A stretch of 63,423 nt of DNA, counting the filler, from Lenisia limosa (taxonomy: Eukaryota; Protista; Breviatea): the NCBI GenBank assembly GCA_001655205.1. It is 10 parts of 10 records of this genome, joined end to end, with 100 filler letters (N's around TTAATTAATTAA, not from the genome) between each part and the next. Parts side by side here need not be neighbours in the genome. Positions count along the whole stretch, not along the records: positions 20,878 to 34,973 come from LPNZ01006316.1; 9 more parts are not named here. One strand, written 5' to 3'. Below the pieces are notes generated by a model. It saw only the letters and a list, made by a program, of their open reading frames with translations, was not told the DNA's origin and did no database searches. Position numbers and translations under genes: made by a program. Positions 20,878 through 34,973 of the stretch are shown here, one piece after another. The first letter of the stretch is position 1; each line of letters begins with the position of its first letter.

Positions 20878-22049
20878 GAAAGGGTGGAAAAATATAAATG
20901 ATGGGGGTTATTCAACTATCCGCTCTTACTCGCAATCTGAAAAAAGTGAAATAAGTTATGGTTCCAAAATGCTTGCTGGAATAGGATAAATGACATATTT
21001 TGACTCCCCCACATTATTGTAGAATAGCCATATTTTGTGTTGCTCAGACAGAGTGAAGTCAATGGCGGTCTTTCGGCTGCACATAAGCCCATAACATTTC
21101 AGCACTTAGCTGTAATAAGCTCATTTTGTACTTTGCTATTTTTGGGTGTTTTGGAACTAAATACAAGCCTGACGCTATTTAAAAACCGTACAATGTAAGC
21201 TTTGTATTAAGAGATAAAGGGACCTCTGAGATGAAGAGAAAAAAGAAATTAGCTAAATCCACCTCCCAACAGGATTTAGCTAAGTACAAACAAGTAATTA
21301 GTGAAAATATTTTGCCAAGTACAAAATGTGCAAATATAGCCAAGTGCTGAAAAGTTACGGGCTCCAGATGGCAGAAAGAAATGTTCATCAACCCCAATTT
21401 CTTATACAAAATCAACACAAATAAAAAACCCTTTATTTCACTCTAAAACTCCATTCAGTATGCTCCATAAATACAAATAATAAGAAAGACTGCCTATGAC
21501 GCCAATGGTTCAAAGAAGACTCCAGTTTTTGGTATGATTTATGGACTTCTTACTCTTAATAAATAAAAACATGAATCACTGCAGTTAGAAGTTTCTGATA
21601 TTGCAGGCGGGGTCACGCAAAAGCCAAGGTTATTCTTTTATTGATTCTCGAAAGCCTGATCAACTCCAGTAAACCAAGTTTAGATCGTNNNNNNNNNNNN
21701 NNNNNNNNNNNNNNNNNNNNNNNNNNNNNNNNNNNNNNNNNNNNNNNNNNNNNNNNNNNNNNNNNNNNNNNNNNNNNNNNNNNNNNNNNNNNNNNNNNNN
21801 NNNNNNNNNNNNNNNNNNNNNNNNNNNNNNNNNNNNNNNNNNNTAGTTTAAAGCTCTTCTCCACATGCTTCCGTCATCTCTCTTGTAAAAAAATATGATT
21901 AAAGTTGTTTACACAGAGATTAAAGCCATTACAATCAACCTAATGCTCCAATTATGGTTGAAAAGCGGAAAAATTAAGTACGAGCCAAAAATATTGCCCA
22001 TTTCGGGGCTTTGACTCCCCAACGCCTTGGGTGTAATGAAGGTTGGGGT

Positions 22050-25000
22050 GCAAGGTAAGGTCAATTTCCATGATTAAGGTTCAATACGCTTCTTGTATTT
22101 TCAGGTTTTTTTTTAACATTTTAAAGCAGGTTGGTAAACCAGAAACTCGGCTCGGATTCCCAGCCAGTCTGTGTATCTCAATTTTCAAAATAAACTCATC
22201 AAAATCCTAATAACTAGTCTAAATGCAGATGCAGAAACCAAGGAGAAAAAGAAAATGGAAGTGTAGAGCAAGATTGTCATCTCTGCTAAAATACCATTTT
22301 ATAAATTTAAGCCTGAGAATTAAATGTGCCCAATATAAACATAAACTAAGGCTCAGCAGCAATTTGACCTCAACCTTAAGACAATATTGTTGACCTCAGG
22401 TACTCTTCAACCTCTGATAGCGGGATTCACGAAAATACTTTCCAGACGCATCTCTCCAAGACTCTACAAAACGAGCAAGCAAGGTATCAAGAGCGATTAC
22501 TGAGTACTTAGGGAAAGTAAAATCAGCCTTCCCCTTGCTTGCACGACCCTGTCCTCATCCTGAATAGCAGAGTTACTACGTGAAATGCACTGTTCATAAG
22601 CGCGTCTCACTCCAATAAGTCTAGTGTAAGAAGTTCTATTGCCGTAGCGAATAGTTCTGTTAGTAGTGCTGCCTCTTCTTCCCATCATGAAATAATTCGT
22701 AAGTTTGGTTGAAGAGGTATAATATACAAAAAAAAATCTAAATATCATCCCTTTATCCAAAGAGATAAATCTTCTAGATGAGCGTCATCTAAAGAATGGC
22801 AAAAATAGCTAAGCTGAAACATCATATTGAACATCTTGGCTCTGTTTCAGCCTCGTTCGTCCCTCAGAACCTCCTTTAAATAAACGCGGAAATCCTAGAA
22901 TGCAATATCCCCTTCTGAACATATAGAATTATCAGTTTTTAAGAAGTTTTGGGGTGATCAGTTTTTTTTCTGATCTGTCCAAGGTGTGCTTCCTCTTCAT
23001 GTCCCTTCTTTTTGACCCTTTTATATGGAAATCGTATAAGAAGACAGTTCAAGATGATTCATTCTTTTCTATTGATCTTCTTTTTGGTTGGTTGAAATCC
23101 CCTGCTCCCAGCCTTAACATTCAGAGAGTACCTTTTGAGGATGATTGACTTCAGCTTTTCAAGGATCTTCTCAAGTGTACTCTAAAAGTTGCCGGGTTCC
23201 TCCTTTAAATCTTCTTTATTGTTCTCTGTAGTGCTTTGCAATTAATCATGTGTAAATCAATTATCATATACCCTAGGGAAATTGGAAATGTCATAATTTT
23301 CGGGAAATGTGTAACATTTTTTCACAACGACCACATTTTAAAACAAATGTCATATTTTATGCTAATATCATGATCCTGTGGGACAAGGGGGACAGGGGGT
23401 AATAAGGAAGGAGGAAAGAAAGGAAACTTTGGTGACACGTCATCTGAATGTCAAAAATATGACGCATAACGCCCAATTTTTGGTAAATGTCATAAATATG
23501 ACTTTTTCATATAAATATGACGTTATTCATATTGGTACGTCACCTGACCGTGAACATCGGACCTTTTTTCGTTTGTTTCATCATAATTGCGATATATATA
23601 TGTATCTCAAAAATTGCCCATTTTTTCTTTAAAAATGGCTGTTAAATAAGAGAAGAAAATTTCTTGGGGTAATAACATACACAAAAAATCACTGAACTAA
23701 ACTGAACTTATTTCATTTATGTTGACTCGATCTTGATTTCTCTTTTGAAAAAACGTTGGGGTGGTGGAATTGGCTTACGCAAATGTTGTCCCAACCCCTG
23801 TTCAACAAAACTCGGTTCTCTTTTGTTTTGTTTTCATAAAGACGATGTCAAAATAATTTGAAAAAGTTTTTAGAATACTGGAAAGGTAATTGTCAGAGGT
23901 TTTCCTTCAAACCAGACACTGTTTTGAGCGAAACATTTTTTTTTTTTTTTTTTTANNNNNNNNNNNNNNNNNNNNNNNNNNNNNNNNNNNNNNNNNNNNN
24001 NNNNNNNNNAAAAGCTTTGTATTTAGTTGCACAAACCCCAGATCACTGGAGTTTCTGGATCTAGAAGGTACAGATGAGTATGTTTCGTTGAAATTTTGTA
24101 CCGATTTACAGCCAATCGAACTCCTTTGCTCTCAGCCTTAACATTCAAGAGTTTCGTTTGACTGGAGCTTTTAAAGGATCTTCTCAAGGGTATTCTATAA
24201 GTTGCTGGGTTCCTCCTTTACTCTTCTCTTCTTTATTTTCTCTGCAGTGCTAAGCGCTATAAACAAAATATAAGCAGTTAATCATGATTTCAGGAGTTCA
24301 GTTGCTCTCAGCTTCCTCCTCAACTGATCGATCACGCTGAAGACCTGTCCTTTGGGGAGCAGAACAACGCAAAATATGACTATTCTCTAAACAAATGGGG
24401 AACAATGAGCCAAAATATGGCATATATCCTATTCCCGCTGGTAAAAAATATGATTAATGTCATATTTTAAGCTTCCGCAGGTAAAAAATATGATAAATGT
24501 CAATTTTCTGGAAAAAGTTTCCTGGGAAAATACAGTGATTTTTGTACTTCAACAACTCTTCGTAACACTACATCTCTATTTATGATTTGCTTAATACTGG
24601 AATCATCAAGACTCTTTTTCTATTCCCGCGGGGTTCGTCAAAAGTCTCTAGTTAGTTGCTGTACAACAACGTCATGCCTAATACTGCTAGTTCGTCGCAG
24701 AGAAATCTGAAAAAGTATTTCAACCAACCAAAAAGAAGATCAATAAAAAAATAATGAATCATCTTGAACTGTCTTCTAAAACGATTTCCACTCTATAGGT
24801 CAAAAAGAAGGGGCATTAAGAGGAAGCACACCTTTGACAGATCAGGAAGAAACTGACCACCCTAAAAGTTCTTGAAAACTGATGTTTCTTTGATAAGAAA
24901 GCTTAATAAGCGTCTAAGAAGCAGTCCTCGACTGCAAGTTTCCAGCATTCAGCAGTAAGAGAAGAAATCCTTCGTTTTGACAAGAAAGAACCTGTGACAG

Positions 25001-25760
25001 TCAATCAGCATAAATACACTAAAACATTCTTGTAAACAAGATCTTGCTCCAAAAAACGCCAGTTCTTCAATTCAAGGCAGTAAGAGGATCCAATGAGGAA
25101 AACCATCGTTTAACTTTGAAAGAAAAAAAAAAAAAAAATAATAATAATAATAAAAAATCACTTTACATTAGTTACATATTATGTAGAATCCTTTTTAAGT
25201 GGCAACAAAACCTGACTTCACCTTTTAGAAAGAACAGAAATGAAACACTATAACATAATTACGCATAAATTGAGAAACTGGCTCTGCTTCACTGAATGCT
25301 GTAGTAAGAGATGTTTTATATATCACAAATTTCGACCCTTTTGCTTGAGATCACTCAAAATATGAAATTTCTCATATTTCATCGTGTATCAGATGATAGC
25401 TCATATCCCCTCGACGCAGACCTCGGAGATATGGCATTCGGGATTTCTTGTTGTTTTGCAGGTTCCTCGGTTCTCACTCGGCTATGCCTCGTTCGTCCCT
25501 CAAAACCTCCCTAAAACAACCGCGGGTAAAAAAAAGAAGATAAATGTCATATTTTCTCATCATATTCATCATATATGACATTCCGATGACGTGTCACCTC
25601 ATATTATCCCCCTTTGTCCCCTTTATCACGTAAATGATGTTTTATGCTTCTAATAGTTGGATCAGAGCGACAAAATATGATTTTTCGCGAAGAAAAAAAA
25701 AAAGACACCAAAACGGAAAATATGACTCTCATTTTTCCGAGGGTATATGATTATAACCGA
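22050..25760. mobile_element. Cluster of decayed, mutually homologous TE fragments in direct and inverted orientation
   Basis: 22950-23100 is an inverted copy of 24718-24860; 23100-23260 is a direct copy of 24120-24260; 23375-23465 is an inverted copy of 25555-25630; gcctcgttcgtccctc occurs at ~22852, ~25487 and ~32191; any reading frame is broken by stops. Confidence 0.6.
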
Positions 25761-25929
25761 GAACAAAATTAAAACCGCGAACGTTTTCTTTCAATGATCA
25801 GGGGTAAAAACATATAGATACATGCAAAACACTACCTTCATATTGAATATTTTACATCAAAAACACAGAGTATGGACTAAGATCGCTCTATGGTAAAGAA
25901 AAGATGGTGTTTCCAGAATGATAAATGCC

Positions 25930-27090
25930 TTACTGGTGTGCATATGATATTTTACTTCAATTTGACGACTACTTCGTCCATTAGCTTCATTATATTGGCT
26001 CAACATTGAAAATTTGGAAAAAAAAACCCGTTACATAAGGTTCTTAATATCTTAAACCACTGTATTTTCTCCAGAAATGAATTTCAGATTCGAATTCTCT
26101 GAAAAATCTGCTATAGGGACACTTTCAAAGAGGGGGGTTTATTATTTTGTTAAAGGAAACTGGGTGACAACCCCAGCCCGGTTCGATTCTGATCAAAAGA
26201 TCATTATTTTTCAAATTGTTTATCTTTTCTTTTTTGCCAAAATTGCTTGCTGCTATTGATGATCCTGTATGGTAACTGGTGATTTTTTTCCCCCCTAAAA
26301 AGGGTGTTGAAAAGAGGGTGTTATTGAAGGGATTATTTGTTCTATTTGTAGCTTGCTCTTTGTTTCTCGCGGTTCTAAAAACCAACCAAATATCATATTT
26401 GATAGTCCCAATTTCTTGTTGGTTAATACGTTCATACATCGGAACCATCCTTGGAAATCCCTTCGGGAAACATTCAGTATAGTATATAAACAAAAAAATG
26501 TTCAAGAGAACCTACCTCCTCATATAGCAATAATAAAACCTAACAAACCTTGACCGAAGAACTAAAAAGAAGGGTGTTTCCATGTTCCTCGGTTCAAAGA
26601 GATCAGGATGATTACATACCTATAACAGTAAAGCTCAAATTGAATAGGTTGGTATTTAAAACCGCGAACATGAATAAAACCGCGAACAAGCCAAAAATCG
26701 ACATAAATCGCTTCAATAACACCCTTTTTAGTGTNNNNNNNNNNTCAAAAAAAAAAGAAATTTTGAGCAAAAAAAAAAGAGATAAAAAAAATCGAAAAAA
26801 AAAGATCTTTTGATCAGAGTCGAACCCAGCCGGGCCCAGTTTCCTTTACGCGAAAATATTTTTGAAACCCCCCTCTTTCAGAATAATAGCATTTTGAGCC
26901 TATTAAAGTGCCCCACTATAGAAACGCAGATTTTTAAGGAGAATTCGAATCTGACGTCCATTTTTGGAGAAAATGTAGTGGTTTTGAGGTATTTAAGTCA
27001 ACTTTTGTAACGGTTTTTTCAAGAATTTTCCTTGTTCAGTCTCTATAATAGAGCCAATGGACGAAATAGACGTCTGATTAAGGTATATAC
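25930..27090. repeat. Pair of ~440-bp inverted repeats (25930-26372 and 26655-27090) enclosing a SWR1 exon
   Basis: Reverse-complement matches include gagaattcgaatctga, cccagtttccttta, gatcttttgatcaga.tcgaacc, cttcaataacaccct and gccaatggacgaa.tag.cgtc. Confidence 0.8.
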
Positions 27091-30000
27091 TGCGTCAATA
27101 ACCCATTTACCGTTCTGGAATGGGGGGGGAGTTTTAACTATATATATGTATACTATATAGAATATCATTTTTGTAAAATCATCATATGATATCATTAAAT
27201 TTGTCGGTTTCTGGGAATGGATAGTGGAAGTACAGCATAAAATAAGATACCCAACTTTGAACACCACCTTAATCCAATCATTTTGTGTACATCACCAGCA
27301 TACATTTTTGCATTACTCGAAACCATTTAGGTTGCTAAGTAACATTTAATTTGAACAAAAAACAATACTCTGCAAACTGACTTTTATGACCAGTAAAGAA
27401 TTAAAAGTTTAACATTTCATAACTAAAGAAGTTTGTAAAAACTGACGATTGTTAGTAGAACTACTCTTCTTGTTCTTCTCAAAAAAGCAAAACATCCCAA
27501 GAAGTGCACGCCAACACCCTTCAGACCCGTGTTGGACCAAACAACACCAATGAAGCCTTCCTCCACTGCAATGCCAAACTGCCCCGCTTGCAAGTCTTGC
27601 TGTATCTCCATTGTAAGTTTTAAACAGAAATTCAACCTATTTTTGAGTAAATCCCTGTGCTTGTGTTTTCCTCAACTCTACTCCTTATTTTATTTCTCCA
27701 CTCTGTTATTTTCTGCTCTTCTGATGTTGTAGACTACTGTTGGAAGCGACAAGGATGCCGAGAACGAGGTCACGGAACTCCTCCCGTTATTGATCCCTAG
27801 ACTCCTCCCAGACCTTCAAGGAAGAGAGGTCCGTTATTGATCCCTAGACTCCTCCAAGACCTTCAAGGAAGAGAGGTCCTTGACTTGGCTCCACAATATG
27901 TGGGAAATCTCGTTTGGAAGCTTTAAGGTGGTTCAGTCTTTTTTCGCTTTTGGAAAATTAAAATAATAGTGTGTTAAGTAATTAAAATGAGCCTTCGGGA
28001 TAATTCCGCAGGGTAGTTTTTCGTAAAACAGCCCTGACATAGAAATTCTAAAAACGGGTGAAAATTCCCTGGAATGTGCCTAACCGAGGCTATCTGAGGC
28101 TAATACTACAATATATCGACGATGAGTAGGTGTTGGTTTTGCATTGTCACTTAAATTATTCAAATTCCTCATCGTGTTTAAACCCCAAAAAGGTGAAAAG
28201 CGAAGCCCAAAAACGTCTAAAATTAGAACAACCTCGGAAGTCGGGAAAATGGGCATTTTTACGTTTTTCTACTCGACGCTATTTCATACAAAAAATTACC
28301 CTGCGGAATTGTCCCGAAGGGTCTGTTTAATTACTTACATTTTTATTACTATTTTCCAAAACCAAAAAAAGGACTGCACCACCTTAAGGACACCAATAAA
28401 TGCCGCTATACTTGTTCCTCATCACTGCTAATCACGGTCACGCTGTTGTTTGTATTTTTTTACCTTTATTAAAACCTCAGCCATCATACTAAGAACCACG
28501 TTGAGACCCCCCAACCTCCGCAAGGCTCTTATGAAGTAGACCTTCCATTGCGTCCTCTCGGGCTGCCTTCAATGATTTTCGGTTTCAATCAAAGGGGACT
28601 CTTATTGTTGCCTCCAGAGAAGACTTTCAACCGCAATGTCTTCTCTAAGAACCGCGATATCATTTACAAGTCCGTAATGAAGGTACCGATTAGCAAATAG
28701 AAAAATTAATAATATTCATAGGAATGGGAGAATAAAAAGTTCGATTTCCACAAGTCCTTTCCCACTGGTGAGAAGATTTGGGTCCCGCTGGTCCAAGGTT
28801 TGTTTTTAGAAATAGTAGATATGGTTGGAATTCAACCGATTCCCTCACATTTCTTTGCAATCGTAGTAAAATCGTCGATTTTGCCATCCTCCACCGTGAT
28901 ACCCCCTCCAAGTCCAAGTCCAAGTCCAAGGCCGGTGTTGAAACTCTGAACGTCTTTGCCAAGGCCCCTGATCCCATCGGCTCGGCTATCTGCCTTAAGG
29001 CTACAAGAATCTGGAATCAGCATTGAAGAACAGGAACGAGGGCAATAGAGGGCGATTTCATTTTATTATTGTTGTTGTTGACCAAACCCAACTTTTTTAC
29101 AGATTCACGACAATGACGTACATTGAGGCCGTATTGCCATATTCCCTCGGAAACGCAAACATATACACATAGGAATTGGAACGTCATTTTTTCCTGTGGA
29201 TTTCATTATTTTTTTCATATTCTTCGAAGCATTATTTCTCAAAACTTCGTTTTGAAAGTACAGTTCAGCTAGCTAACTCAAGCTCCTTTCGGGACTAGGG
29301 GGATAGTGGGAGTAAGAAGGGGGGGGGGGGAAGAAGCCGAGNNNNNNNNNNNNNNNNNNNNNNNNNNNNNNNNNNNNNNNNNNNNNNNNNNNNNNNNNNN
29401 NNNNNNNNNNNNNNNNNNNNNNNNNNNNNNNNNNNNNNNNNNNNNNCGAATGCCATGATGTAATATCATATACTCTATGGAATATTAGAAATGTCATATT
29501 ATAAGTAATCTCAAGCAAAAAAAGGTCAAAATTCCTCATAAATTTTTATTTTTTTTTTACTCCTAAATCCAGTGAAGCAGAGCCAAGAAGACGTCCAGTG
29601 AAGCGTTTTGCTCAATTAATGCGTAATTATGTAAGAGTGTTTCTTATCTGTTCTTTCTAAAAGGTGAACTCAGGTTTTGTTGCCACTTAAAAAGGTTTCT
29701 ACATAATTTAACGAAAGCGATGCAGTATTTATACAGTGGCGGGCNNNNNNNNNNNNNNNNNNNNNNNNNNNNNNNNNNNNNNNNNNNNNNNNNNNNNNNN
29801 NNNNNNNNNNNNNNNNNNNNNNNNNNNNNNNNNNNNNNNNNGTGAAAAACCCCAAAACGGTTTATGGGTTATATGTAAGATTTTTTGGGGGAAATTTCTA
29901 ATTTGTGAATATTTTTGAATGAACTGAACTGAAAATACCAAGTTACCTTTTAAAATGCTTTTTTTTTTTAATCTCTCCACCTTTTTTACACGTTATACTA

Positions 30001-33000
30001 TGGGTAGAGGTAAAGAAATTTCACCCGAAATTAGAGGCCAAATAGAAATGTTGCACAGGGTTCTCTAACTCCAAGATTAAAACCTGGATCACACAAGATC
30101 TTCCAACAGGATCTATTGCCACAATTGTCAGCAAGTTGAAGATTAAAGGAACTATTAAAGTTGAGAAGTGGAAGGCCACGTGCTTTGACGAAGTCCAACG
30201 AACTGCACCTCCGATAGATTCGAGAATCTGCCAAGCTCCCTATGTCAGTCCATGCTGCTGTTGTATCCCAGAAACTTGGTAAGACCGTCTCGCGTTATAC
30301 TCTTCGTCGTGTTGCTAAGAAATATGGTTACATTGTCGAAGGGTCAGAAAGAAGCCTAATTATCTTCTTGAATAGTTTTGTTCATATTTGTTAATTAGGG
30401 TTGCCCAATCCCCCGATTTAAATCCAATTGAGCATGTTTGGGAAATTCTGAACAGAAGAGTAAGGGCACGNNNNNNNNNNTGTACAAGGTCAAACTTTCC
30501 GGTTAATTGCCATTTATTCCTTGAATGTAGCCAATATCACGGTTTTGGTTGTTTGTGGCAGTTTAAGGGCCGCAAACGGGTAGCCAAGTGACATAATTTG
30601 GGTTTGAGCCAAGAATATGTAAAAACTGCATTCTATCCTGTGATTATGACTGAAATTACTTTCGAAAATAACGGGGAAATGAAGTTTGTAGTACTTTTAT
30701 TAGGGAAATGAAGTTTATAGTACTGTTATAGGGAAAATTCAAGCTGTCCGGGGGAGTTTTGATGTGTCCAGAGATTTTGAATGATGTCCGGAGCTTTGAC
30801 TATTATTTTTATTTTATTTTTTTCAGTGAAATGGCAAAATTTTTAAAGTGAAGTTCAGCTTAACTCATGATCCTTTCGGGACAAAGGAGATAGTGGGAGT
30901 AAGAAGGGGGGGGGGGGGANNNNNNNNNNNNNNNNNNNNNNNNNNNNNNNNNNNNNNNNNNNNNNNNNNNNNNNNNNNNNNNNNNNNNNNNNNNNNNNNN
31001 NNNNNNNNNNNNNNNNNNNNNNNNNNNNTATGAATATGATAAAATATGATACAATCCACAGGAAAAATATGATGATTTCATTGTGATTGTACTATATTTT
31101 CTTTCCCATTGTCACTTTAGAAAGAAAATCTATCTTAAGAACACCAAAAAAAAAGGAAAGGAGAGTAGTTGGCTTTGGGGAATGGGGATAAAAAAAGGAA
31201 GAAATCTTCAGATAACTTCCAAATGAGACGCAAGAGAGGCATAGGACAGGGGGGATGAAGATCAGTTTAGGGATCAGATCAATGATGGAAGCAGTGAGAT
31301 GCAAAAACTGCTTGAATGCAGTGTTCAACTTCTTCAAATGCTCTAAATGATCATAACACATGCAGAGCAACCAGAACAAGAGGAAAGGAGATCATTCAGA
31401 AGATCAGGAATTTTCAAATGCTCTTAATGATCATAACACATGTAGAGCGGAGTAGGAAGCAACCAGAAGAAAAGGAAAGGAGATCATTCAGAAGATCAGG
31501 AATTTAGACGAAAAGCAAGTCATTTTAAGAAAGAAAGTAACCTAATAGAGTTATAAAGAAGGTCAGAGGCATCAACATGCTTCATCAGGTGGTTGAAGAG
31601 CTTTCAAAATCTATTGATTTTGCTTCACGTAGACTTAAATCGTGAAGAGAACTTCTCAGCAGCTTCCGTGGAGAGAAGAGAAGTCAGGAGTTCATGGGAG
31701 ACAAACCACTCCTCATTTAAGTTAGTTGGCATCCTAATTGAGGCAAAAAGAACGACAGAAGCTCTACAAACCAGCAATCAGCATCCAAAATCCTTCAATT
31801 CTCACTTTTGAGAGAAGTGTGTATTTAAAAGCTAATAATAGCCAAAAACAGAAGCAACAAAAAAGGCAAACGAGAAAAAAAATCTTGATAATTAAATTGA
31901 ACTGAGGTTATATTTCAATGTTTTGTTGCAAACGGATCACCTTAAGATCATGTTTTGATAAACCGGCTAAAGCATCCTCTCCGTTATCTTTCGCCTTTTA
32001 AAGTGTAAGGACTTTCTTTTGCAAGACAATTTTGGGCCAATATGATAAAATCTCTGTAAAAAATGTCGTTTCCAATCATTCCCCTCATGTGTATGATTGC
32101 TCATATCTACTCGTCGCAGCCCTCGAGGATACTCGTTAATATTTTTATTTGATTATTTGCGGATGTTCCTCGGGACTCTCTTAACTAAAGCCTCGTTCGT
32201 CCCTCTGAACATCCTGTAATAATCAATTATATTCACCGAGCATATCCACCCGTGGAATATGTACATATCATACATGACGATGACCCTAAATTGCGATTGA
32301 TAATCTCCAAATCTCCATTGGAGATTTAGACAACAATTTTCCGCATATCTCATAATAATTGGTCAAAATTTCATCAATCAGGTAATAGAAAAAAAAAAAG
32401 GAGGTGAGGGGGGTTCAACGTACAACAATACCTTTCTCAATTGCATCAAAACATTTTTCACATCTAAATATGAGCCACCATTCAGAAATTTCAAAGTTAT
32501 TTTATAAAAAAAACTTGAGTTGATGAGAGCCCTAAAAACTCATTATACAAAACAAGTTGCCTCCTTGAAAGAGGTACATTTAAAACACTCTCTGTTTTTA
32601 AGGGAAGTTCTGACTCAACATCCGATTTTAATCTTCTTAGCACAAAAGGTCTAAGGATACTATGGAGTTTAGACAAAATGCTATCACATTCATTCACAAA
32701 ATTAGTATAAAAAGAAACCAGAATCACCCTCGACAAGAGAGGTGAGAGGATGAGAAAAAAAAGCACCAAAGGCTCCTTGAGAATCAAAAATATGAGGTAA
32801 AAGAAAGTGCAATAATGACCACAGTTCGAGTAAAGAGTTCTATGAAAAAAAAAAAAAAGGTAACTTGAAGAGGAGTACCTGTTAAAAGCAATCTTCTCAG
32901 AGCAGGAAACGAAACTAAAGTTTTCCACCTTTGTGAAGAAGAATTTTTGAGTTGGTGGGCTTCATCTAAAATGTAATACTTCCATTTCTAATTAAAACTC

Positions 33001-33464
33001 ATCAAGGTTACCTTTTTTTTCAAAAACTGATGATCTTGCACAGCAACTGTATATGATGTGATACAAATATGAAAAGCATTTGACTTCATGAAAGACAACC
33101 GTTTCATTTGCCTCTCTTTTGAACTCCCATAATAACCAAGCACTTTGAACATTGGGCACCATTTTTTTAATTCCAGCTCCCAATTGACAAGTACAGAGGT
33201 AGGAGCCACAATTAAATGCGGTCCCCATAATTTTTCTTTCATAACCAAATGACTTAGGAGTGCAATAGTTTGAATTGTTTTACCTAGCCCCATTTCATCC
33301 GCAAGAATTCCATTTCTTTTCTAATATTTTTTTTAAAAAAAAACTTTTGAATACAAAGATATTAACCAGACTAAACCATCATGTTGGTAGGGTCGGAGCC
33401 GCCCGAAAAAACGATTGCTTGAAAGAAAAGGAGCTGGCACTAGAACCTTTGAGCAAAAAGACAT
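26540..33464 (-). CDS. SWR1: SWR1/SRCAP-type Snf2 chromatin-remodelling ATPase (N-terminal ATPase lobe recovered; HSA and HELICc exons not found)
   Basis: [18 protein letters not shown]|[25 protein letters not shown]...[25 protein letters not shown]...|[15 protein letters not shown]...[11 protein letters not shown]|[15 protein letters not shown]...|[18 protein letters not shown]...|LMQLRK|[11 protein letters not shown] (last exon begins 26619). Introns are 24, 24, 25, 22, 23 and 5812 nt. A further possible exon (LGFCVTPPAIS) lies near 21600. Confidence 0.9.
27460..29026 (+). CDS. Hypothetical multi-exon gene nested antisense inside the giant SWR1 intron
   Basis: GC-richer exon-like blocks with GT/AG borders at ~27460-27612, 27732-27928, ~28486-28682, ~28755-28797 and ~28866-29026 ([52 protein letters not shown]). 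The exact splicing model is ambiguous. Confidence 0.55.
27979..28333. mobile_element. ~355-bp TIR element (family M4) with TTAA/AATT-type flanks, in an intron of the nested gene
   Basis: taattaaaatgagccttcgggataattccgcagggtagttttt versus the reverse complement of aaaaaattaccctgcggaattgtcccgaagggtctgtttaatta. Confidence 0.75.
29732..30470 (+). pseudogene. Tc1/mariner transposase relic (frameshifted, internally deleted) with left end TA-CAGTG at 29732
   Basis: [19 protein letters not shown] (from 30000), [10 protein letters not shown]..., [21 protein letters not shown], then directly [21 protein letters not shown] (Tc1 DD34E third-residue motif); most of the catalytic core is deleted. Confidence 0.9.
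30481..30802. mobile_element. Partial copy (right half and TIR) of family M3
   Basis: ttgccatttattccttgaatgt as at ~6405-6430; ttcaagctgtccggg...gatgtccggagctttgacta as at 6624-6684. Confidence 0.8.
31320..31505 (+). repeat. Imperfect ~100-bp tandem duplication
   Basis: ttcaaatgctct.aatgatcataacacatg...gcaaccagaa...aggaaaggagatcattcagaagatcaggaattt occurs twice. Confidence 0.85.
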
Positions 33465-33789
33465 GCAAATCACCAAAAATATCAACGATATGTTTCAAAA
33501 AAACACCTCACCAATGACATTTCAAAAATCACCTCAAATAGGATGAAAAAAAGAACCCCTTGGTGGTTGTGAGCACATATTTCATATTTATATACGATAT
33601 GTATATAGTTTTACTTCTGTCGATTTATGATAACCCTTAATAGTTCAAATTTATATATTTTTGCAATATTTCATTTTCACCCTTTTTATTACTCCTGTAG
33701 AGCAGGTAACAAAGTCAGGATAATGTCTTTGATTTCATTTTTTCTTCTGTTTTTGAATCACCCCATTTTAAAACCTTGACTAGACCACT

Positions 33790-34720
33790 TTCATGTTCCT
33801 CAAGGACAATATTAGATTATTGCCCATGTCACCAGACCCCGCAAAAACGACGCTAAGGACACTGCGCATGTCGCTCCTACCAAACTTGCCTCCAAAGCTC
33901 TTGATGCCCTAGGTGCTGATCACTGTTTCATCGAACGTCAAGTTTGGCTTAAGATCAAAACGCTTTCGTAAGCAAGTGTATTTGTAATACACATTGTGTT
34001 AACTGAAAATTGTGTAGAATACAGAAGATTCTCATTGTTTGTTTTATAAAAACTGATGATTAACAGATTTAGCAGCACGATAACGACTTTGATTCCTCTG
34101 CTCACGTTGACAGCATTGACTTTAACCTTGTGAATCCAACATGGCGCCAAGAACATCAAGAAGTCTGTGGCACTGCTCCTCAATGGCATTGACGTCAAGG
34201 GTAAGAGTATTTGGGAAAAAAAAACAGAAAAAAGGCTGTCTGTAGTATCTTGAATGGTGATTGTAATCTGATTTGCGGAGGTGGTCTCGTCAGCTGACTT
34301 ACACTCTTGCCAAATAAAGCAGCCTTGACTGGGGTACCGGAGAGACAAATAGAGGTGATGATGCAGTGTCGTTTGGTCCTTCAAGGTGACAACAAAAACA
34401 AAATGGGAACATGTTCAAAAAACTCTATCAAAATGCTTCATCATTGGTGATAGGCAAGGTGAAGTCTCTGGTAGAAGTTGAGGTTCTGAGTGTGGAGATC
34501 CTTCTTAAAGGAAACTCGACGGCGGCATTTCGGGTGGATTGACTGTCAAGAGAAGTGAGAACTGGGGTGAAACTGTTCTCAATTTCTTTCTGATCATGTA
34601 AGAAAACAAAGAAACTGGAAAGACCTTACCATTTGCGCCAAAAACTCAGCCTCTGCAGGATTCGATCTGACAAACTGATGGAAGGCTCTCAAGGTTATTT
34701 TAATGATGAGAAAAGATTAC
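33790..34720. CDS. Unresolved coding-like exons (a + strand chain at 33790-34250 and a - strand chain at 34230-34720)
   Basis: + strand: IIAHVTRPRKNDAKDTAHVAPTKLASKALDAL...QHDNDFDSSAHVDSIDFNL|NIKKSVALLLNGIDVK with a 22-nt GT-AG intron; - strand: LRAFHQFVRSNPAEAEFLAQM|KEIENSFTPVL; no family recognised. Confidence 0.35.
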
Positions 34721-34973
34721 AATTGCGAACTCAATGCTATATCCCTGCCCATTTACGATCTTTCATGAACATTCCCTATCTAAATACAAGGGATTACCGA
34801 AAAGCAGTCTTTGAATTTCTTAGCTGCTGTTCCGTCTTTTAACTTGAATTGTTTCACTCATTACTACGACAAAAAAAGAGAAGAAAAAAAAACGGTATTA
34901 TATTATGTATCGTATATCATTTGCGGCCGTTCAAAATTCTGGTTTTTTTCGCTAATTCTGGTGTTTTCTTGTT

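What the first reader, a model, noticed from the sequence alone, without database searches (positions are those of the whole stretch)
32492..32718. Two consecutive non-canonical GT..TG micro-introns in the SWR1-like gene
Seen in sequence (minus strand): exon ...[10 protein letters not shown] must join [18 protein letters not shown] by removing GTTTCTTTTTATACTAATTTTG (32718-32697, 22 nt), and ...[10 protein letters not shown] must join [20 protein letters not shown] by removing GTTTTTTTTATAAAATAACTTTG (32514-32492, 23 nt). Each carries an in-frame stop if retained. I found no nearby GT-AG pair of the right phase that spares conserved motifs. The GT..TG excisions give a spacing matching Swr1/SRCAP as I recall it (F.....T...L..G.......LMQLRK, gap-free), and their lengths match the gene's canonical introns (24, 24, 25 nt). 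Both end in TTTG shortly after a branch-like CTAAT/ATAAC. Established: TG 3' splice sites are known mainly as rare alternative acceptors beside an AG. Inference: obligatory TG acceptors in two adjacent introns of a conserved chromatin remodeller point to a spliceosome with relaxed 3' recognition, or to a dedicated class of micro-introns, in this lineage.
Basis: partly seen in the sequence, partly recalled or inferred. Interest (0 to 1): 0.85.

Follow-up and report, generated by a model that had tools for sequence, protein, structure and literature searches.

The report
Two micro-introns without AG acceptors
A conserved chromatin-remodeller gene can only be read if two tiny inserts of about 22 and 23 bases are cut out, and neither ends in the near-universal AG; RNA proof that they are spliced could not be obtained here.

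Summary
On the minus strand an SRCAP/Swr1-type SNF2 gene is split by three 24-25 nt GT-AG micro-introns. It is also split by two inserts of 22 nt (32718-32697) and 23 nt (32514-32492). Both inserts start with GT, carry an in-frame TAA, shift the frame and end in TTTG.

I scored every in-frame excision against a profile of 120 homologues. This recovers the three canonical introns exactly. It puts the 23-nt GT..TG excision in the top tie for the second insert. For the first insert no GT/GC-AG option exists at all, but its 3' end is unsure: TG at 22 nt, or GA at 25 nt.

An independent assembly of the DNA run reproduces the sequence at depth 39. The gene continues beyond a 5.8-kb transposon-laden intron, so it is not a truncated stump. 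A polyA RNA run holds a share of the locus's 31-mers that fits removal of all introns.

Most likely (about 0.6) these are real spliceosomal micro-introns with non-AG acceptors. The organism is unidentified; it may be a fast-evolving animal with ultra-short introns.

The parts
33345..33437 (-). Exon Ea: [31 protein letters not shown], start of the SNF2 ATPase lobe. The ORF may begin at ATG 33464.
   Evidence: Translation; aligns to homologues; ATG located.
33321..33344 (-). Intron i1, 24 nt, GT-AG, phase 0.
   Evidence: the profile test recovers this excision in the top tie.
33012..33320 (-). Exon Eb, 103 aa, with the GLGKT Walker A motif.
   Evidence: Pfam SNF2-rel_dom E 6e-23; 66-69% identity to homologues.
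32988..33011 (-). Intron i2, 24 nt, GT-AG, phase 0.
32865..32987 (-). Exon Ec: [11 protein letters not shown]...LLLTGTPLQ, with the DEAH box.
32840..32864 (-). Intron i3, 25 nt, GT-AG, phase 0.
32719..32839 (-). Exon Ed: [40 protein letters not shown], plus the first base of the next codon.
32697..32718 (-). The alternative 3' end is at 32694 (25 nt, GT..GA). In-frame TAA at 32704-32702. CTAAT lies 4 nt before the end.
   Evidence: None of 996 in-frame stop-free excisions has GT/GC-AG ends; the profile prefers 25 nt by 4 bits. GC is 0.18, like the canonical introns.
32515..32696 (-). Exon Ee: (V)[60 protein letters not shown].
   Evidence: Pfam SNF2-rel_dom E 2e-11; alignment.
32492..32514 (-). 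Insert i5: GT..TG, 23 nt, phase 0. In-frame TAA at 32499-32497. ATAAC lies 4 nt before the end.
   Evidence: Rank 3 of 1445 excisions, in the top tie at 90.8 bits. The best canonical rival (GT-AG, 32539-32514) ranks 163 at 82.2 bits. GC is 0.13, against 0.42 for the rival intron.
32432..32491 (-). Exon Ef: [20 protein letters not shown].
26620..32431 (-). Intron i6, about 5.8 kb, GT..AG, phase 0. It holds N gaps, repeats and a decayed Tc1/mariner transposase. GTAT stands at both junctions.
   Evidence: tblastn and profile hit to the next exon; sequence; DDE_3 hit; repeats.
26560..26619 (-). Exon Eg: [18 protein letters not shown]..., the direct continuation after LMQLRK. Its 3' limit is not determined.
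   Evidence: tblastn 65-76% identity to the residues that follow LMQLRK in 8 homologues; profile E 4.8e-7.

Best explanation
i4 and i5 are genuine spliceosomal micro-introns of a functional SRCAP/Swr1-type gene. They are cut out of the pre-mRNA like their 24-25 nt GT-AG neighbours, but at acceptors that are not AG. i5 ends in TG. i4 ends in TG (22 nt) or GA (25 nt). Proposed mechanism (inferred, not shown): in introns this short the branch site lies only 4-6 nt from the 3' end. Both inserts end in TAAYTTTG, and canonical i2 ends in TAATTAG. The second catalytic step may therefore take the first G a few bases downstream of the branch adenosine. That would keep the terminal G that pairs with the first intron G and tolerate U instead of A at position -2. 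Shown: the genomic sequence, the need for excision, the lack of a homology-preserving AG acceptor, the intron-like composition, and the continuation of the gene downstream. Inferred: that the excision happens in RNA, the exact cut sites, and the mechanism.
For: Removing the two inserts gives one open 296-aa frame that is 57-62% identical to SRCAP/domino/Swr1 proteins. The i5 junction is gap-free. A profile of 120 homologues ranks the true GT-AG excision in the top tie with the right length for all three control introns. It does the same for the 23-nt GT..TG excision of i5. For i4 no GT/GC-AG excision exists among 996 in-frame options. Both inserts share the canonical introns' length range, 5' GTTT, T-richness and GC of 0.13-0.18, against 0.30-0.42 in the exons. 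Exons downstream of i4 stay open and homologous: Ee, Ef, and Eg beyond a 5.8-kb intron. At this base composition, about 100 codons without a stop have a chance near 6e-4 (my own calculation). Logan's separate assembly of DNA run X1 gives one 2848-nt contig over 32096-34943 with no differences, at the single-copy depth of 39. PolyA RNA run X2 holds 0.61 and 0.72 of the sampled 31-mers of two windows. The expected shares are 0.63 and 0.74 if all introns are removed and the exons are fully covered. They are 0.72 and 0.87 if i4 and i5 are kept, a misfit of z -2.6 and -4.0.
Against: No read or contig across either junction was seen. The k-mer argument fails if the mRNA is only about 83% covered. 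It also cannot tell the GT..TG cut of i5 from the 26-nt GT-AG alternative. The profile prefers 25 nt (GT..GA) for i4, so 'two TG acceptors' is not secure. The locus lies in repeat- and gap-rich DNA. No HSA domain or helicase-C lobe was found in the piece. None of its six intron positions is shared with bird, limpet or butterfly orthologues. A second, intact copy elsewhere in the genome cannot be excluded. Constitutive non-AG acceptors are very rare in known eukaryotes.
Confidence: 0.6

Rival explanations
1. This is a dead or dying copy. The locus is a pseudogene or null allele whose two acceptors mutated from AG to TG. Its transcripts, if any, retain the inserts and are not translated. A functional SRCAP/Swr1 gene lies elsewhere.
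For: The context is repeat-, gap- and transposon-rich, with a 5.8-kb TE-laden intron. No HSA domain or helicase-C lobe was found in the piece. No ancestral intron position is retained. There is no direct RNA junction evidence.
Against: All 296+ codons, including about 100 codons downstream of the first defect, are open. They keep every ATPase motif and show 50-75% identity per exon to an annelid orthologue. Under neutral decay, two hits that both change A to T at position -2 of adjacent introns, with no other lesion in about 1 kb, are very unlikely (my own reasoning). DNA depth equals single-copy depth. The RNA 31-mer share fits removal better than retention.
Confidence: 0.15
2. i5 is spliced canonically elsewhere. 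A 26-nt GT-AG intron (32539-32514) is removed instead, and the T-rich 23 nt are read as FFYKITL. Only i4 would then be non-canonical.
For: This excision is in frame and stop-free and has a typical length. It gives LYND, which resembles the LYDD of homologues. It fits the RNA 31-mer shares as well as the GT..TG model does.
Against: It scores 8.6 bits lower on the homologue profile, at rank 163 of 1445. It deletes EFLGLSSTQ, which matches EFMSLSSTK/EFMSLSDTK of homologues. It leaves the product one residue short. The removed stretch has exon-like GC of 0.42, while the retained one has intron-like GC of 0.13.
Confidence: 0.07
3. Sequence or assembly error: the true genome has AG at both acceptors.
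For: The scaffold is a draft with many N gaps. Run X1 may be the very data the assembly was made from, so agreement with it is not independent (warning).
Against: A different assembler (Logan) gives an identical 2848-nt contig at depth 39, with no variant listed in 32270-34870. Two separate A-to-T consensus errors in non-homopolymer positions of Illumina-type data are improbable.
Confidence: 0.03
4. The inserts stay in the mRNA and are bridged in translation by programmed frameshifts at the in-frame TAA codons: +1 at TAC-TAA in i4 and +2 at AAA-TAA in i5. This would resemble Euplotes-type recoding.
For: Both inserts hold a TAA in the upstream frame, and i5 has the AAA-TAA motif known from Euplotes (from memory). 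The shifts would lead into the conserved frames (sequence).
Against: It needs two different shift sizes. It would add 7-8 hydrophobic residues at each site, where excision gives gap-free or near gap-free alignment. Both inserts start exactly with GT and match intron length and composition. The gene groups with animals, not ciliates, though weakly. The RNA 31-mer share disfavours retention.
Confidence: 0.02
5. The inserts are removed by another route. Either they are U12-type (minor spliceosome) introns, which tolerate odd termini, or they are cut out at DNA level like ciliate IES or dicyemid somatic elimination.
For: Minor introns are known with non-canonical termini (PMC10639083). Dicyemids are reported to eliminate DNA in somatic cells (PMC6543705).
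Against: The 5' ends are GTTTCTTT and GTTTTTTT, not RTATCCTT. The branch-like motifs lie only 4 nt from the 3' end, and the introns are far shorter than any U12 intron. No TA..TA or other direct repeat bounds the 22- or 23-nt excisions (sequence). The DNA contigs show no joint that skips them.
Confidence: 0.03

Closest known systems
TG dinucleotides as alternative 3' splice sites of U2-type introns in human (Szafranski et al. 2007, PMC2374985; abstract seen)
   Same: GT at the 5' end, TG at the 3' end, and an otherwise U2-like intron. The terminal G is kept and only position -2 changes.
   Different: By that paper's title and abstract the human cases are alternative sites. From memory, not read here, they sit beside an AG used in the same intron. 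Here the non-AG site would be the only acceptor that keeps the protein. i4 has no in-frame AG at all, and i5's nearest usable AG destroys a conserved motif. The introns here are 22-25 nt.
Ultra-short GT-AG introns of dicyemids and myxobolid myxozoans (PMC13644364, PMC6543705, PMC2222250)
   Same: Length of 22-27 nt. The splice-site motifs are reduced to little more than GT(a) and AG. A-residues lie close to the 3' end as the presumed branch site. The genomes are repeat-rich and fast-evolving. The three canonical introns of this gene fit that description.
   Different: Those surveys report AG acceptors and rest on annotation pipelines that accept canonical sites only. Non-AG acceptors were not described. 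Those papers stress conserved intron positions, whereas this gene shares none with other animals.
U12-type introns with non-canonical termini (PMC10639083)
   Same: A non-AG 3' end is tolerated.
   Different: There is no /RTATCCTT 5' motif and no TCCTTAAC branch site at 10-15 nt from the 3' end, and the introns are much too short. Membership is rejected.
Euplotes-type programmed +1 frameshifting at AAA-TAA (recalled from memory: Wang et al. 2016, Lobanov et al. 2017; not read here)
   Same: An in-frame TAA, preceded by AAA in i5, at a point where the conserved frame changes.
   Different: It would need +1 at one site and +2 at the other. Excision, not read-through, restores the alignment. The inserts begin with GT and look like introns.

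Membership tests
U2-type (major) spliceosomal intron | 5' terminal GT (or GC) | tested here: met
   Both inserts begin with GTTT at the frame-restoring boundary, as do i1 and i3. Slides of 1 nt give equal protein scores, so GT is chosen by analogy.
U2-type (major) spliceosomal intron | 3' terminal AG | tested here: not met
   i5 ends in TG. i4 ends in TG (22 nt) or GA (25 nt). There is no GT/GC-AG excision for i4, and only homology-destroying ones for i5.
U2-type (major) spliceosomal intron | Branch-site-like motif with A shortly upstream of the 3' end | tested here: met
   CTAAT (i4) and ATAAC (i5) lie 4 nt before the end. Canonical i2 has TTAAT 3 nt before its end. This is a sequence resemblance only; branch use was not shown.
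U2-type (major) spliceosomal intron | Absent from mature mRNA, with exons joined precisely | tested here: inconclusive
The 31-mer shares of 0.61 and 0.72 fit removal (0.63/0.74) better than retention (0.72/0.87), but only if the exons are fully covered.
U2-type (major) spliceosomal intron | Length and composition like the genome's other introns | tested here: met
   22 and 23 nt against 24, 24 and 25 nt. GC is 0.13-0.18 against 0.08-0.29 for the introns, while the exons have 0.30-0.42. The sample is only three canonical micro-introns.
U12-type (minor) intron | 5' /RTATCCTT and a TCCTTAAC branch site 10-15 nt from the 3' end | tested here: not met
   The 5' ends are GTTTCTTT and GTTTTTTT. The only A-rich motif lies 4 nt from the end.
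Tandem or alternative TG acceptor (human type) | TG used next to a competing AG acceptor of the same intron | tested here: not met
   No AG lies within i4 or i5. The next downstream AGs are out of phase (i4) or 34 nt away and out of phase (i5).
Swr1/SRCAP/domino subfamily of SNF2 ATPases (the host gene) | SNF2 N-lobe with the [19 protein letters not shown] and LMQLRKVCNHP motifs, and best matches to Swr1/SRCAP | tested here: met
   Pfam PF00176. All top named hits are SRCAP, domino, p400, Swr1 or PIE1.
Swr1/SRCAP/domino subfamily of SNF2 ATPases (the host gene) | HSA domain upstream and a split helicase-C lobe downstream | tested here: inconclusive
   Neither was found in 20878-34973 by tblastn or homologue profiles. 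The piece may simply end too early or be too divergent.
TA-bounded internal eliminated sequence (ciliate type) | A TA direct repeat at both ends of the excised DNA, and an IES-free copy in somatic DNA | tested here: not met
   No TA..TA spacing of 22 or 23 nt fits i4 or i5. The DNA contigs show no skipping joint.

The most novel reading that the evidence does not exclude
In this ultra-short-intron lineage the spliceosome may pick the 3' splice site by its distance from the branch point (the first G downstream) and no longer require A at position -2. Constitutive GT..TG, and perhaps other non-AG, micro-introns would then be a regular genome-wide class. GT-AG-only annotation would have missed them, which may contribute to broken gene models and low completeness scores in such genomes.
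Probability: 0.25. Interest if true: 0.8.

Novelty: new variant of a known kind. Interest (0 to 1): 0.55.

Why it matters
The AG at the 3' end of introns is one of the most invariant signals in eukaryotic gene expression. Known TG acceptors are described as alternative sites. An essential, conserved gene that depends on non-AG acceptors in two adjacent 22-25 nt introns would show how far 3' site recognition can be relaxed when the branch point and acceptor are almost fused. It would also give a natural system for the role of position -2 in the second catalytic step. In practice it would mean that gene prediction and RNA-seq mapping restricted to canonical sites under-call genes in genomes with ultra-short introns.

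Tried and rejected
1. Laying RNA contigs. The X2 RNA contigs that hold 61-72% of the 31-mers did not appear. They may have been filtered, or five short gaps may have pulled likeness under 90. Nothing can be concluded from this.

2. Finding the organism's own protein or transcript product. I searched with exon Eb, by exact look-up, with the representative library and with two alignment queries seeded with all window exons, for lengths of 232-737 and about 720-2290 aa. No hit was above 76% identity even on short stretches, nor above about 65% over more than 200 aa. The genome and its RNA are not in those collections.

3. A junction pattern scan of JGI metagenome contigs found nothing.

5. Intron-position conservation as support for old spliceosomal introns failed. 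The annelid gene has no intron in this stretch. Bird, limpet and butterfly share four positions, none used here. i5 lies 2-3 codons from the conserved FMGQxK|TK intron but not at it.

6. Taxon identification failed. Identity is about 58-64% to animals, algae and amoebae alike. The ML tree places the fragment in Metazoa next to an annelid on a very long branch, with weak support. Dicyema japonicum fits in genome size, GC and repeat content. However, its published runs date from 2018, not 2016. A myxobolid myxozoan is equally possible.

7. Pfam on ten ORFs upstream (33783-34839) gave nothing. Rfam on the whole piece gave nothing.

8. Pseudogene, frameshifting, U12-type and IES readings were considered and ranked low. 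The reasons are given under the rival explanations.
Full report
**What is there.** The piece (20878-34973) is AT-rich (GC 0.31-0.40), full of N gaps and repeats, and carries one recognisable gene on the minus strand. Exon-sized open frames between 33437 and 32432 translate to the N-terminal ATPase lobe of an SNF2 protein (Pfam PF00176, E 6e-23 and 2e-11). Its best matches are all SRCAP, domino, p400, Swr1 or PIE1 proteins.

The frames are linked by three canonical micro-introns:
- i1, 33344-33321, 24 nt, GT-AG
- i2, 33011-32988, 24 nt, GT-AG
- i3, 32864-32840, 25 nt, GT-AG

They are also linked by the two inserts of the finding:
- i4, 32718-32697, 22 nt
- i5, 32514-32492, 23 nt

Both inserts start with GTTT, are T-rich, contain an in-frame TAA, change the frame and end in TTTG after CTAAT or ATAAC.

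It is 57-62% identical over its full length to homologues from animals, fungi, plants and protists. The alignment is gap-free at i5 and has one extra residue at i4.

To test the boundaries objectively I built a profile from 120 homologues. I scored every in-frame, stop-free excision of 0-89 nt around each junction.
- For the three canonical introns, the GT-AG excision fell in the top tie with the right length in all three cases. The ties are one-base slides that give the same protein.
- For i5, the 23-nt excisions came first. GT..TG ranked 3 of 1445 at 90.8 bits.
- The best canonical alternative for i5 is a 26-nt GT-AG intron at 32539-32514, rank 163 at 82.2 bits. It deletes EFLGLSSTQ, which matches EFMSLSSTK and EFMSLSDTK in homologues. 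It would also make an exon-like stretch (GC 0.42) the intron and an intron-like stretch (GC 0.13) the exon.
- For i4, none of 996 options has GT/GC-AG ends.

The acceptor of i4 is therefore non-AG, but TG is not certain.

The next exon, [11 protein letters not shown]..., lies 5.8 kb downstream at 26619. It follows a ...TTATAG acceptor in phase 0 (tblastn with eight homologues; profile E 4.8e-7; sequence). The gene thus continues across a long GT..AG intron (i6). That intron holds gaps, repeats and a decayed Tc1/mariner transposase.

About 100 codons downstream of the first non-canonical insert remain open and homologous. At this base composition that has a chance near 6e-4 (my own calculation). 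Under neutral decay it is also unlikely that the only two lesions in about 1 kb are both A-to-T changes at position -2 of adjacent introns.

Against a healthy gene, neither an HSA domain nor the helicase-C lobe was found in the piece. A second copy elsewhere cannot be excluded.

**DNA and RNA evidence.** Two public runs of one study hold the locus.
- Logan's contigs of the DNA run X1 include one 2848-nt contig over 32096-34943. It has no differences and sits at the single-copy depth of 39. The TG ends are therefore not a slip of one assembler, although X1 may be the data the assembly came from.
- The polyA RNA run X2 holds 0.61 of 117 sampled 31-mers of 32300-33500. It holds 0.72 of 83 sampled 31-mers of 32430-33300.
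- If the mRNA is fully covered, the expected shares are 0.63 and 0.74 with all introns removed. They are 0.72 and 0.87 with i4 and i5 retained (z -2.6 and -4.0), and 1.0 for contaminating DNA.

The data fit full splicing, but a partly covered unspliced RNA fits too. The shares also cannot separate the GT..TG model of i5 from the canonical alternative. I treat this as weak support only.

**Context.** None of the six intron positions of this stretch is shared with orthologues. The annelid gene has no intron here. Bird, limpet and butterfly share four old positions that this gene lacks.

The exons contain about twenty GT(N18-25)AG strings, including a perfect 22-nt one inside conserved codons (32553-32532), and about as many GT..TG strings. 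Terminal dinucleotides clearly do not suffice to define introns here. Composition and a branch motif close to the 3' end must contribute.

Both inserts end in TAAYTTTG, and canonical i2 ends in TAATTAG. In all five micro-introns the cut falls after the first G downstream of the last A-rich motif. This suggests, as inference only, selection of the acceptor by distance from the branch point with tolerance of U at -2.

**Organism.** It could not be named. The fragment sits on a very long branch inside Metazoa, next to an annelid, with weak support. The only animals reported with introns under 30 nt are dicyemids and myxobolid myxozoans (PMC13644364). The Dicyema japonicum genome matches in size, GC and repeat content, but the run dates do not match. 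Myxozoans are noted for wholesale loss of ancestral introns (PMC10639083). Neither literature mentions non-AG acceptors. Their pipelines accept canonical sites only.

**Comparison with known systems.** The closest precedent is TG as an alternative acceptor in 36 human genes (PMC2374985). The difference is that here no competing AG exists and the site would be constitutive. U12-type introns, ciliate-type IES and Euplotes-type frameshifting were each tested against their defining features and do not fit (see the membership table and the rival explanations).

**Verdict.**

| Reading | Probability |
|---|---|
| Real micro-introns with non-AG acceptors | about 0.6 |
| Defective copy | about 0.15 |
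| Canonical alternative for i5 only | about 0.07 |
| Sequence error, recoding or other removal routes | under 0.1 together |

The remaining few per cent are left unassigned.

If true, this is a new variant of a known phenomenon, of real interest to splicing specialists and to annotators of ultra-compact animal genomes. It is decidable with one properly parameterised RNA read mapping or an RT-PCR.

Noticed in passing
window 26620-32431 (minus strand): A 5.8-kb GT..AG intron splits LMQLRK|VCNHP, a site with no intron in the bird, limpet, butterfly or annelid orthologues. It holds N gaps, repeats and a decayed Tc1/mariner DDE_3 ORF (30388-30468, plus strand). Both junctions carry GTAT (AAG|GTATTG ... 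TATAG|GTATGT). This could be a TA target-site duplication of a transposon that landed in an exon and is now spliced out.
   Followed up: partly
window 32553-32532 (minus strand): A perfect 22-nt GT..AG string (GTTTTGTATAATGAGTTTTTAG) lies inside the conserved exon, coding VLYNEFL. Splicing it would create a stop. The exons hold about 20 such GT(N18-25)AG strings, so end dinucleotides and length alone cannot define introns in this genome.
   Followed up: partly
window 33437-26560 against loci L001-L004: All six intron positions of this gene stretch are lineage-specific. The four positions shared by bird, limpet and butterfly are absent here: EKG|W, KRx|GW, LHK|VL and FMGQxK|TK. i5 lies only 2-3 codons downstream of the last one.
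   Followed up: yes
window 26054-26106 / 26932-26984 and 26172-26235 / 26771-26834: Two nested pairs of inverted repeats (83% and 77% complementary) flank the short exon [11 protein letters not shown] (26619-26560). The exon appears to sit between two oppositely oriented copies of a repeat.
   Followed up: no
window 29274-29330 and 30861-30917; also 22850-22889, 25486-25525, 32190-32229: Dispersed repeat families occur here. One (91% identical copies) ends in a poly-G run directly against N gaps, which suggests that assembly breaks at this element. Depth in DNA run X1 rises from 39 to 190-590 over 31490-32270 and to over 2000 at 34870-34973.
   Followed up: no
window 33464-33446 and 33500-34973: The open frame upstream of the ATPase lobe reaches back only to ATG 33464 ([14 protein letters not shown]...). 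No HSA domain or other Pfam family was detected in the 1.5 kb upstream on either strand. The protein may lack the usual N-terminal part, or its exons are too diverged to see.
   Followed up: partly
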